DNA of 64,000 nt, from positions 656,214-720,213 of the forward strand of contig JAHDYR010000053.1 of assembly GCA_019828565.1 (NCBI GenBank), read 5' to 3'. The DNA comes from Carpediemonas membranifera BICM (taxonomy: Eukaryota; Protista; Fornicata). Every line of letters starts with the position of its first letter. Within the stretch, counting starts at the first letter, position 1. Shown in pieces: positions 54,778 through 57,450 of this stretch. Made by a program: the position numbers and the translations under genes. Under the pieces are notes generated by a model. The model was not told where the DNA came from. It worked only from the letters and a program-made list of their open reading frames with translations, and ran no database searches.

Positions 54778-57450
54778 TTACAACAACAGCGTCTTGACAA
54801 CATCCGAGACTCTGAGTGTCACAAGGTCCTCGTAGCGCTGGCCGTTACCGACATAGGCGATCGGGACATTGGTTGTGTGTACCATCGTGATCGCCGCGCC
54901 AACCTTCGTCTCTACGGCATCATACTTTGTCAGCACGATGCCGTCGATCAGATGAGGTGTCGGCCGGTCAGAGTAGGATGCGAGCGCCTCGTTGAACGCC
55001 GTCAGCTGGCTCACAGCCTCGCCGCCAACAAGGGCCTCGCCAACGAAGAGCACGCGGTCTGGCCGAGCAGTGTCGACAAGATTCGTGAGTTGACGCATCA
55101 GGTTGGAGTTACCCTGCATCCGCCCGGCCGTGTCGATGAGCAACACGTCCCTGCCTTGCCCAGTGGTCTCATTAATGGCGAATTTGGCAACATTGGCGGG
55201 TGTGGTGCTGTAGCCCGACTCAATCAAATCAACGCCGAGTCGTGTAGCGTGGAGCTTAAGCTGCTCGATAGCACCCGACCTGAAGGTGTCGCATGCGGCC
55301 ATAGAAACGGTGAGGCCAGCGTCGGTGCACAGCGCGGCGACCTTGGCGAGGGAGGTACTGTTGTGTGTTACGACCATCTCGCGGTTGATGATGAATCGTG
55401 CGTTGCCGTCGATGGTGAAGCCGTAGTAGTCGTCCTCCGGCAGCCGCTCGACCGTGAAGGCCTGGCGGTGTTGGTCAGGCTGGGGGCGGCTGGACTCAAC
55501 CCGCAGAGGAAGGCGGGCCAGGTCGCCCGTGATCTCGCCAGACTTGGTCACGAACAGGCCCAAGGAGCGGGCCATGAAGGCGGCGTCGTCGACCAGACCC
55601 CTGGAGCCGGACTGGTAGCCGTTGGTGTCGACCAGGCCGGCCAGACACTGGCGCCGGGCCTCGGCGGGCCCGTACTTGATGGCTGGGGGAACGCGCTTGC
55701 CGTACGGACGCATGGCCTCGACGGGGTCGCGGTTGGGGAGGAGCTCCTCGATCGCCTCGAGGACGGCGGCGGGGGTGTCCTCGGGCATGGCGTCGTCCCA
55801 GGCGGCCCCGAGCCAGGCCCCGACGACGTATGGGTGGACGGGGACGGCGGGGTCGGCCCGGCCGTGGAAGGAGAGCTCGGGGGCGATGACGGCCTTGAGC
55901 TCGGCACGGATGGCGTCGGGGAGGGCGAAGAAGGATTCGACGGAGATGTCGAAGACGCCGTCCGCCGGGACGTAGAGGGGGTTGCCGGCCAGTGACGCCA
56001 GCCAGCCCTCGGCGACGGCCCTGGTGTCGAACTGCTGGGACTCGAGCTGGATGGCGGTGGCCCCGCCATCCAGACCCAGGCTGAGTCTGTACGCCGCGGC
56101 AGCCCACCCCTTGCCCTCGACCTCGGCCAGGCGCTGGGGTTCGGGCAGGGCTACCGTGAGGATATGGGCCATGTTGCACGTGAACTTTGCCCCACCCTGG
56201 AGGCTGACCCGCGCCATCTCCTGTCGGCCGGTGGTGACACTGCCCACGGTCCTGGGGGTGCCGTCGTCGCCCATCAGTATGTCACCGACGACAACATCCT
56301 GCACGGGCTTGAACTCGCCGTCGGCCATGAGCACGGGCGTGTCCTTGCCGAGACACTTGCCGACGCCGTTCACACCGACGAAAGCAATGACATAGGGCCT
56401 TCCGTTGCGGCGCTCTCTCTTGTGCTGCTCCGCCTCCGCCAGGACGTCGATGGTTCCGTGTGTGGACAGAATACCGGCCATCGTCGTCGAGACGGCCTCG
56501 GTCACGGCCCGGGAAACTCGCATGCCCGTCCTCCCGCCCTGCATGTCCTGGCGTACGCGGTCACAGATGCTGTCGGCAACATCAACGGCCACGTTTCGCT
56601 CGATGAGTCTGCTGCGGAGGGCCTTGAGAGCGCTGCTGACGTCGGCGTCACCCCTGCGGAACATGGAGAGGATGCGAGACGTGCTCTCGATCTCATCGAG
56701 GTTCACATGGTCAGACTCGATCACACGGGACTTCGTCCTCTTGTACGGCCCCTCGGCCTTCTTCTCGGTCTGCTTATGCTCCGTGAGCGCGGCGATCTCA
56801 TCCTTCTCCTCCTGGGTGACCTGGCCGGCCCACTTGCGGCCCTCCTTGCCATCCTTCCCCTTCTTGCCGTCCTTATCTTTGCCCTTGCCGCGAGGGATAT
56901 AGGCCGAGGGGCCGCGGGCCTGCTTCGGTGAGACCCGTGCCATCAGCGAGGTCAGCTCGTCGATGTCAAGAGTCCTGTCTGCCTCTTCGTTGGACGAAGG
57001 GGACGAGGCCGCAGACCCTGTGGGGCCAGCGGCCTTGGTGTTGGCGCTGTTGGCCGAGCCGCCGCCCCTGAGCGATCGGGCAACGATGCGGGAATACTCG
57101 GCGTCGAAGTCAAGTAGCTTCGTCGGGTTATCGGTGATCTTGGCGGGGAAGGCCGCCAGGAACCCATCGGCCAAAGCGGCAAGGATGTCGTCGCCATGCA
57201 TCTTGCTGGCAAGGATGCGCTGGACAATCAAAACAAAGAAAATGCCTCGGACGTTGTCCCGAAGGCACTTGAATGCGAATTGGGAGGCTTCAGGCTGCCC
57301 CTTCTTGAAATCAGCGAGGCTACCTCTCCCAACCAGGTGAAAAGCGATCAATTCGTTGACAAGACACATAAGGGAGTTAGCCTTAGCAGAATCGTCAGCG
57401 TGGTGATAAAGAACAACGCCTCCTGTCGTTGCGACGGTGAAAAGCTCCAT
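54778..57450 (-). CDS. SRPRA: Signal recognition particle receptor alpha subunit precursor containing an intein
   Basis: N-terminal SRX (ATTGGVVLY), NG domain with GVNGVGK|STSLAK, ACDTFRSGAIEQL, IDTAGRMQ, FVGEALVG and IDGIVLTKYD. 558 aa remain after intein removal. Confidence 0.95.
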   Translation of the reverse strand: MELFTVATTGGVVLYHHADDSAKANSLMCLVNELIAFHLVGRGSLADFKKGQPEASQFAFKCLRDNVRGIFFVLIVQRILASKMHGDDILAALADGFLAAFPAKITDNPTKLLDFDAEYSRIVARSLRGGGSANSANTKAAGPTGSAASSPSSNEEADRTLDIDELTSLMARVSPKQARGPSAYIPRGKGKDKDGKKGKDGKEGRKWAGQVTQEEKDEIAALTEHKQTEKKAEGPYKRTKSRVIESDHVNLDEIESTSRILSMFRRGDADVSSALKALRSRLIERNVAVDVADSICDRVRQDMQGGRTGMRVSRAVTEAVSTTMAGILSTHGTIDVLAEAEQHKRERRNGRPYVIAFVGVNGVGKCLGKDTPVLMADGEFKPVQDVVVGDILMGDDGTPRTVGSVTTGRQEMARVSLQGGAKFTCNMAHILTVALPEPQRLAEVEGKGWAAAAYRLSLGLDGGATAIQLESQQFDTRAVAEGWLASLAGNPLYVPADGVFDISVESFFALPDAIRAELKAVIAPELSFHGRADPAVPVHPYVVGAWLGAAWDDAMPEDTPAAVLEAIEELLPNRDPVEAMRPYGKRVPPAIKYGPAEARRQCLAGLVDTNGYQSGSRGLVDDAAFMARSLGLFVTKSGEITGDLARLPLRVESSRPQPDQHRQAFTVERLPEDDYYGFTIDGNARFIINREMVVTHNSTSLAKVAALCTDAGLTVSMAACDTFRSGAIEQLKLHATRLGVDLIESGYSTTPANVAKFAINETTGQGRDVLLIDTAGRMQGNSNLMRQLTNLVDTARPDRVLFVGEALVGGEAVSQLTAFNEALASYSDRPTPHLIDGIVLTKYDAVETKVGAAITMVHTTNVPIAYVGNGQRYEDLVTLRVSDVVKTLLL
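55360..56355 (-). mobile_element. Class 1 intein (332 aa) with degenerate LAGLIDADG homing endonuclease
   Basis: Block A CLGKDTPVLMADG, B FTCNMAHIL, C-like PYVVGAWLGAA, D KRVP, E LAGLVDTNG, H MARSLG, F DDYYGFTIDGNARF, G VVTHN, +1 Ser. Confidence 0.96.

What the first reader, a model, noticed from the sequence alone, without database searches (positions are those of the whole stretch)
55360..56355. Intein in the Walker A motif of a nuclear SRP-receptor alpha GTPase
Seen: an in-frame 332-aa insert begins with Cys (CLGKDTPVLMADG), ends with His-Asn (VVTHN) and is followed by Ser. Removing it rebuilds the SRalpha P-loop GVNGVGK-STSLAK exactly. Established: C1/HN/S+1 is class 1 protein splicing, the GK|S/T Walker A junction is a recurrent intein site in NTPases, and eukaryotic nuclear inteins are rare (VMA1, PRP8, RNA polymerases and a few protist lineages). 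Inference: SRalpha is a host I do not recognise as a standard intein carrier. ER targeting here would depend on protein self-splicing, which could make it a conditional switch.
Basis: partly seen in the sequence, partly recalled or inferred. Interest (0 to 1): 0.92.

Follow-up and report, generated by a model that had tools for sequence, protein, structure and literature searches.

The report
Recombining intein in SRP receptor gene
The protist Carpediemonas carries a self-removing protein insert (an intein) in the GTP-binding loop of its only SRP-receptor gene; that host and site are already on record in other eukaryotes, but this copy has a dead DNA-cutting part and has swapped DNA with near-identical inserts in unrelated genes, which bears on how such inserts reach new genes.

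Summary
Observation confirmed: a 332-aa class-1, VMA1/PRP8-type intein (Pfam Hom_end_hint 7e-22; model matches PI-SceI) splits GVNGVGK|STSLAK of the single SRalpha gene. The genome is Carpediemonas membranifera. The novelty claim fails: GenBank KAJ5073537.1 (Anaeramoeba ignava, named 'intein-containing SRP receptor alpha') and Rhizophagus SRalpha carry inteins at the same site, and PMC10710043 names the Rhizophagus one and describes P-loop hopping. Nothing supports a conditional switch. What stays interesting: this intein is no close kin of those SRalpha inteins (AU p=0.012). It belongs to a clade of nine Carpediemonas P-loop inteins, none of which keeps both catalytic aspartates. It is 97% identical in DNA to an intein in a SNF2 gene and is mosaic with those in a DEAD-box gene pair (28% divergent over nt 1-195, 2-3% over nt 196-795; p=0.0005). 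That shows ectopic recombination between non-allelic inteins in a genome without Ku/NHEJ, and means near-identity alone does not date the jumps. I found no paper reporting Carpediemonas inteins.

The parts
54778..57450 (-). SRalpha (SRP receptor alpha) gene, 890-aa precursor, intronless, single copy in the genome
56356..57450 (-). N-extein, aa 1-365: longin-like N-terminus (weak Pfam SRP-alpha_N, E=0.039), linker, N domain, first half of Walker A
56356..56376 (-). Walker A first part GVNGVGK; DNA ends TCGGCAAG, 8 nt shared with the SNF2 host site
55360..56355 (-). Intein, 332 aa, class 1, VMA1/PRP8 (Hom_end_hint) type; GC3 0.895 versus 0.72-0.76 in the exteins
56353..56355 (-). Cys1 nucleophile (block A)
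   Evidence: invariant in 75 inteins
56164..56175 (-). Block B N61-x-x-H64
   Evidence: N61 and H64 invariant
55981..56142 (-). Accessory three-strand-plus-helix subdomain (intein aa about 72-125) at the place of the PI-SceI DNA recognition region; AP2-like fold, weak evidence
   Evidence: Z 4.2-4.6 to AP2-fold chains, 3.9 to PI-SceI domain I; aligned relative P0016 has Pfam AP2
55546..55839 (-). Degenerate LAGLIDADG remnant: block C Asp is Ala184, block E Asp is Asn245, C-E spacing 61 aa versus median 95.5, no beta-saddle predicted between the two helices
55360..55467 (-). Blocks F and G, ending His331-Asn332
55357..55359 (-). Ser+1, the C-extein nucleophile and the Walker A Ser
54778..55359 (-). 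C-extein, aa 698-890: rest of the SRP GTPase domain (DTFR, DTAGR, TKYD motifs)
56161..56355 (-). Mosaic segment 1 (intein nt 1-195): 1.0% from the SNF2 copy, 28-29% from both DEAD-box copies
55561..56160 (-). Mosaic segment 2 (nt 196-795): 1.9-2.7% from all three other copies; 145 nt identical in all four
55360..55560 (-). Mosaic segment 3 (nt 796-996): 7.0-7.5% from all three other copies, which differ by 3% among themselves

Best explanation
A working, constitutively splicing class-1 intein that is a selfish passenger. The 890-aa precursor is translated with the insert; Cys1, block B His64, His331-Asn332 and Ser+1 excise it and join Lys365 to Ser698, restoring the GTPase P-loop (inferred from intact residues, not shown). 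It reached this site from another P-loop gene of the same genome lineage, not from the SRalpha inteins of other eukaryotes (tree, moderate support). Its own nuclease is dead. Since insertion, the copies in SRalpha, SNF2 and the DEAD-box gene pair have exchanged DNA by ectopic gene conversion through host homologous recombination: the mosaic is shown, the repair pathway is inferred.
For: All splicing residues conserved, confident Hint fold, single essential-type host, insert retained in probable RNA contigs. Four copies 91-97% identical in DNA, none elsewhere above short patches. Starred clade 99/91 of nine Carpediemonas inteins, all at GK|S/T sites of SRalpha, SNF2, DEAD-box, AAA, Rad51-like, midasin-like, SMC6 and kinesin genes; SRalpha-site inteins as one clade rejected, p-AU 0.012. 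Breakpoint at nt 195-196, max-chi2 125-157, permutation p=0.0005; fourfold sites 19/27 versus 7/156. SRalpha-SNF2 divergence is uneven, 13/789 versus 15/201, Fisher p=8e-5 with the boundary chosen after seeing the data. The midasin/SMC6/kinesin subfamily is patchy too (runs test p=0.0002). The DEAD-type start joined to the shared body is in independent read contigs (loose end at 56178). Both catalytic Asp lost, versus 54 of 87 outside relatives that keep both. No Ku in the genome (PMC8516963). Multi-copy inteins have GC3 0.80-0.89, single-copy ones 0.66-0.82, which fits GC-biased conversion.
Against: No protein-level proof of splicing. The tree rests on 104 columns and the bootstrap had not settled; grouping with the Anaeramoeba SRalpha intein alone is not rejected (p=0.128). 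Direction and donor of the exchanges cannot be fixed. The runs are only guessed to be RNA. The GC3 contrast rests on two families.
Confidence: 0.72

Rival explanations
1. Recent endonuclease-free jumps: the SRalpha and SNF2 copies are 97% alike because one was copied whole into the other's empty P-loop recently, by host repair using the 8-nt TCGGCAAG microhomology, after the nuclease had died.
For: Identity runs to the first base of the intein and 8 nt into the flank; dS 0.073; no member of the nine-copy clade keeps both Asp; no intact relative in the genome; closest orthologue lacks the intein.
Against: Conversion between older resident copies gives the same picture and is shown to occur; the last 201 nt are 7.5% apart; the 3' flanks share 1 nt; GGCAAG at 9 of 10 host sites is not clearly above background (p=0.054 with the codon-pair frequency).
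Confidence: 0.3
2. Classical homing by a promiscuous LAGLIDADG nuclease: the ancestor invaded all these P-loop sites while active, then each copy decayed; the shared dead state in the four close copies was spread later by conversion.
For: Established homing cycle; intact relatives at GK|T/S sites are common in viral and metagenomic proteins; PMC10710043 proposes promiscuous nucleases. Compatible with the best explanation, it differs only in how the first insertion happened.
Against: Needs loss of both Asp in every subgroup (A/N, T/N, A/S, A/A), whose fourfold sites are saturated; the sister eukaryotic inteins in the 94/90 group are also degenerate.
Confidence: 0.45
3. Conditional switch: splicing is regulated (redox, temperature, metal) and gates ER targeting.
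For: Single-copy gene, P-loop cut before the Mg-coordinating Ser, so unspliced precursor should be inactive (inference). Conditional splicing is known for some prokaryotic inteins (own knowledge).
Against: No junction-near cysteine; the same intein sits in unrelated hosts; orthologues lack it; SRalpha was invaded by unrelated inteins several times.
Confidence: 0.06
4. The insert is removed as an RNA intron, or is an assembly artefact.
For: A GT..AG pair around the insert would remove 999 nt in frame.
Against: That cut gives GVG-N-TSL, losing the invariant Walker A Lys; the insert is an open, conserved intein with dN/dS about 0.2; read contigs bridge both junctions and show no skipping joint.
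Confidence: 0.02

Closest known systems
Anaeramoeba ignava SRalpha intein (GenBank KAJ5073537.1, P0121)
   Same: Same host, same site GVNGVGK|STSLAK, same C1/HN/S+1, same Hom_end_hint type, degenerate nuclease
   Different: 275 aa; only 44% identical over the N-terminal splicing part; lies elsewhere in the tree
Rhizophagus and Funneliformis SRalpha inteins (PMC10710043 Fig. 4B; GBC16724.2, GBC03987.1, CAG8494396.1)
   Same: Same site GVNGVGK|STN; paper infers intragenomic transfer between SRP receptor and IF-2 in that lineage
   Different: 420-436 aa, about 42% identical in the N-terminal part, separate branch
Anaeramoeba cluster-1 P-loop inteins (PMC10710043 Fig. 6B)
   Same: Related inteins in the Walker A motifs of non-homologous genes of one genome
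   Different: Here the copies are 91-97% identical in DNA, mosaic, nuclease-dead, and in a genome without NHEJ; the main text I read reports no such breakpoints (its supplement was not available)
Saccharomyces VMA1 intein PI-SceI and fungal Prp8 inteins
   Same: Fold, block A/B/F/G residues, DNA-recognition insertion in the splicing domain
   Different: PI-SceI keeps both acidic residues and a full nuclease; 454 versus 332 aa; different host and site
Unnamed metagenomic eukaryote SRalpha inteins (P0006, P0007, P0009)
   Same: Same site; share the extra subdomain; same wider 94/90 group
   Different: 33-35% identical; direct sisterhood with this intein rejected weakly (p-AU 0.037)

Membership tests
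Class-1 intein | In-frame insert in a conserved host motif, absent from orthologues | tested here: met
Class-1 intein | Cys/Ser1, block B His, terminal His-Asn, Cys/Ser/Thr+1 | tested here: met
   C1, H64, H331, N332, S+1
Class-1 intein | Hint fold | tested here: met
   Pfam PF05203 over cut-off; model and Foldseek
Class-1 intein | Retained in the mRNA | tested here: inconclusive
   Contigs bridge both junctions, cover only the gene body, no skipping joint; runs only guessed to be RNA
Class-1 intein | Protein splicing yields ligated exteins | not testable with these tools
   needs MS or a reporter assay
Active LAGLIDADG homing intein | Acidic catalytic residue in blocks C and E | tested here: not met
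   Ala184 and Asn245; criterion from PMC8966425
Active LAGLIDADG homing intein | Full-length nuclease domain with DNA-binding beta-saddle | tested here: not met
   C-E 61 aa versus 95.5, E-end 88 versus 116; no strands predicted between the two helices; no Hom_end or LAGLIDADG_3 hit
Allelic SRalpha-site intein lineage | Same insertion site as known SRalpha inteins | tested here: met
Allelic SRalpha-site intein lineage | One clade with the other SRalpha-site inteins | tested here: not met
   p-AU 0.012 for all together; pairing with Anaeramoeba alone not rejected, 0.128
Conditionally splicing intein | Splicing depends on a stimulus | not testable with these tools
   no cysteine trap visible

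The most novel reading that the evidence does not exclude
Nuclease-dead inteins still spread between unrelated P-loop genes in Carpediemonas, by host homologous recombination on microhomology, and the dispersed copies evolve in concert like a repeat family; the SRalpha/SNF2 pair is a recent such jump in a genome that lacks NHEJ and Rad51A.
Probability: 0.3. Interest if true: 0.78.

Novelty: new member of a known kind. Interest (0 to 1): 0.47.

Why it matters
As an SRalpha intein it adds one more organism to a known host and site. Its value lies in intein mobility. PMC10710043 leaves open whether non-allelic spread needs promiscuous nucleases, NHEJ or gene conversion. Carpediemonas has no Ku, no nuclease-intact member of this clade, about 17 inteins of this type (more than the four of the richest eukaryote known before Anaeramoeba), and copies close enough to read recombination tracts at the DNA level. 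The mosaic also warns that intein trees and 'recent jump' claims can be distorted by conversion between resident copies. One intein that apparently works in three unrelated extein contexts may be a tolerant tool for protein engineering.

Tried and rejected
RNA intron: rejected. Novel host or site: rejected. Intein-free SRalpha paralogue: none, the only other hit is SRP54 at 30%. DNA target signature GGCAAG: 9 of 10 host sites, but background is 0.46-0.61, p=0.054 or 0.005 depending on the baseline, so not claimed. Nuclease-intact clade member that could act in trans: none found; the one element with both Asp (C8:698305) is a distant type at a Cys site. AP2 identity of the accessory subdomain: no Pfam hit, no pairwise match, Foldseek nothing, VIA Z under 5, so only a resemblance. 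Finer mosaic within nt 196-996 of the four copies: runs tests mostly not significant. The two DEAD-box copies are a recent host-gene duplication, counted as one site. Papers: no hit for inteins in Carpediemonas or for recombination between inteins; the PNAS supplement was not held. Three Pfam calls failed on wrong coordinates and one tree call on a group error (54). The joined (spliced) SRalpha was not built or searched; its pieces were searched apart by reference.

Full report
Observation. The minus-strand ORF 54778-57450 encodes 890 aa. Residues 366-697, window 55360-56355, are a 996-nt insert that starts CLGKDTPVLMADG, ends VVTHN and is followed by Ser, between FVGVNGVGK and STSLAK. Pfam gives Hom_end_hint at 7e-22 for the insert and SRP54 plus SRP54_N for the host. 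PI-SceI and Prp8 inteins are the best solved relatives. A model from a 75-sequence alignment has pLDDT 94 and matches PI-SceI at E=8e-21. C1, N61 and H64 are invariant in that alignment; H331 and N332 nearly so.

Organism and host. The genome has 24,237,836 bases in 69 contigs, matching C. membranifera in PMC8516963 Table 1 (24.2 Mb, 69 contigs, 57.1% GC). Proteins from other loci of this genome are named C. membranifera in GenBank. SRalpha is single-copy. The closest orthologue found, P0122 from assembly GCA_002919055.1, is 64% identical in the GTPase part and has no insert; I take it to be C. frisia from its GC and contig size, which is an inference. It matches human SRalpha at 1.8e-61. Neighbours are ordinary eukaryotic genes: SET-domain, CFA20/WD40, eIF1A, THOC5.

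Expression. Contigs of two public runs, guessed to be RNA, cover 54807 to about 57440 and nothing beyond the gene. One bridges the 3' junction and one the 5' junction with no differences, and no joint skips the insert. A GT..AG pair could remove 999 nt in frame but would turn GKS into GN and lose the Walker A Lys. Protein splicing is therefore the only route to an intact P-loop; that it happens is inferred, not shown.

Novelty of the host. It is not new. GenBank KAJ5073537.1 is named 'intein-containing signal recognition particle receptor subunit alpha precursor' of Anaeramoeba ignava and has its insert at GVNGVGK|STSLAK. Rhizophagus SRalpha has one at GVNGVGK|STN and Funneliformis starts one at the same place. 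PMC10710043 names an SRP-receptor intein in Rhizophagus and reports inteins moving between the Walker A motifs of unrelated Anaeramoeba proteins. Three metagenomic eukaryote SRalpha genes also have one here.

Origin. The nearest relatives are in the same genome: inteins in a SNF2 gene (97% aa) and in two DEAD-box genes (92%, 91%). The DEAD-box pair is a recent duplication of the whole host gene, so there are three independent sites. About 17 loci carry Hom_end_hint. In a tree of 115 splicing domains the window intein sits in a 99/91 clade of nine Carpediemonas inteins, all at GK|S/T junctions of P-loop genes, while other SRalpha-site inteins fall in three other places. One clade for all SRalpha-site inteins is rejected (p-AU 0.012); pairing with the metagenomic ones is weakly rejected (0.037) and with Anaeramoeba is not (0.128). 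The alignment has only 104 columns, so independent invasion is likely, not proven.

Nuclease. Against PI-SceI, the block C Asp is Ala184 and the block E Asp is Asn245 (these blocks carry the catalytic aspartates, PMC8966425). Fifty-four of 87 outside relatives keep both acids, with median spacing 95.5 aa against 61 here; none of the eight clade members aligned keeps both (the ninth is a frameshifted duplicate). The model keeps the two helices but no strands between them. No intact clade member was found in the genome. An extra three-strand-plus-helix subdomain (aa about 72-125) lies where PI-SceI has its DNA recognition region and resembles AP2 only weakly.

Mosaic. The four close copies are not uniformly diverged. 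SRalpha and SNF2 differ from both DEAD-box copies by 28-29% over nt 1-195 but by 2-3% over nt 196-795; the break is at nt 195-196 (max-chi2 125-157, permutation p=0.0005), and fourfold sites differ at 19/27 before it and 7/156 after it. SRalpha is 1.0%, 1.9% and 7.5% from SNF2 in three successive segments. The DEAD-type start joined to the shared body appears in independent read contigs, so this is unlikely to be a polishing error. The midasin/SMC6/kinesin subfamily is also patchy (runs p=0.0002). Multi-copy inteins have higher GC3 (0.80-0.89) than single-copy ones (0.66-0.82), and the unconverted DEAD-type start has fourfold GC 0.67-0.69 against 0.90 in the shared body; this fits GC-biased conversion but is only suggestive. 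Flanks share little: 8 nt upstream for SRalpha/SNF2, 1-3 nt downstream. The genome has no Ku hit, in line with PMC8516963, which reports no NHEJ, alternative end joining present, Rad51A lost and two Dmc1.

Mechanism. Shown: intein anatomy, site, dead-nuclease signature, four near-identical non-allelic copies, recombination breakpoints. Inferred: constitutive class-1 splicing restores the GTPase; the element came from another P-loop gene of this lineage; host homologous recombination exchanges DNA between the dispersed copies. Open: whether the first insertion used a then-active promiscuous nuclease (0.45) or happened without one (0.3). Because conversion is demonstrably at work, 97% identity cannot by itself date the jump. 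A conditional switch has no support (0.06): no cysteine lies near the junctions and the same intein serves unrelated hosts.

Earlier notes and verdict. Unchecked notes of this scan already describe P-loop-hopping, nuclease-dead inteins at SMC6, kinesin and a Rad51 paralogue of this genome; I reached that reading before opening them and confirmed it independently; a word search for the mosaic found nothing. I found no paper reporting inteins in Carpediemonas, but the PNAS supplement could not be read. Verdict: real; new member of a known kind; interest 0.47, resting on the recombination evidence and not on the host. The joined, spliced protein was not built or searched; the pieces were searched apart.

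Noticed in passing
G000:C39:730310-731416 (L066), 18 kb beyond this intein; and C4:170096 / C4:191247: Two pairs of same-clade inteins lie about 18-20 kb apart (SRalpha with an AAA ATPase; DEAD-box with a midasin-like gene). Rough chance of two such pairs is 0.02; may hint at local hopping.
   Followed up: partly
L070 (C63:831996-833191) and L071 (C63:823650-824846): Duplicated kinesin genes with the same intein; one copy is 1196 nt, i.e. frameshifted, a real pseudogene or an assembly error.
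   Followed up: no
L068, L069, L071: Midasin-like, SMC6 and kinesin inteins (87-90% nt identical) are also mosaic.
   Followed up: partly
L076 (C8:698305 and C8:701061, minus strand): Two neighbouring VMA-type intein-like ORFs; the first keeps both LAGLIDADG aspartates and ends HN|C, the only candidate active nuclease seen.
   Followed up: no
L073 (C15:279763-280638): Intein-like ORF followed by only four residues and a stop, with no P-loop upstream; sister to the Ski2 intein. Possibly a stranded or free-standing copy.
   Followed up: no
L063 (C54:605708-606739): A further intein-like region of another type (PF14890, below cut-off) ending VHN|C in an unrecognised 909-aa ORF.
   Followed up: no
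L074, L075, L077, L072: Inteins in a G-alpha P-loop, VMA1, a Na/K-ATPase and Ski2 (1914 nt, nested); several already noted by the scan.
   Followed up: no
L048, L049, L050 (metagenome contigs): An unnamed gene-dense eukaryote lineage with SRalpha inteins at the same site and conserved neighbours; related degenerate inteins sit in kinases (HRDLK|S), AAA ATPases and DDX6 of metagenomic eukaryotes, hinting at another intein-rich lineage.
   Followed up: partly
P0005:36-536: A metagenomic protein with two inteins three residues apart (THN-SGK-CLGK), flanking one Walker A motif.
   Followed up: no
window 56344-56364 (minus strand): The flank TCGGCAAG is repeated in intein codons 2-4 (GTCGGCAAG|TGTCTCGGCAAG); 9 nt in the SNF2 copy. 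May be chance.
   Followed up: no
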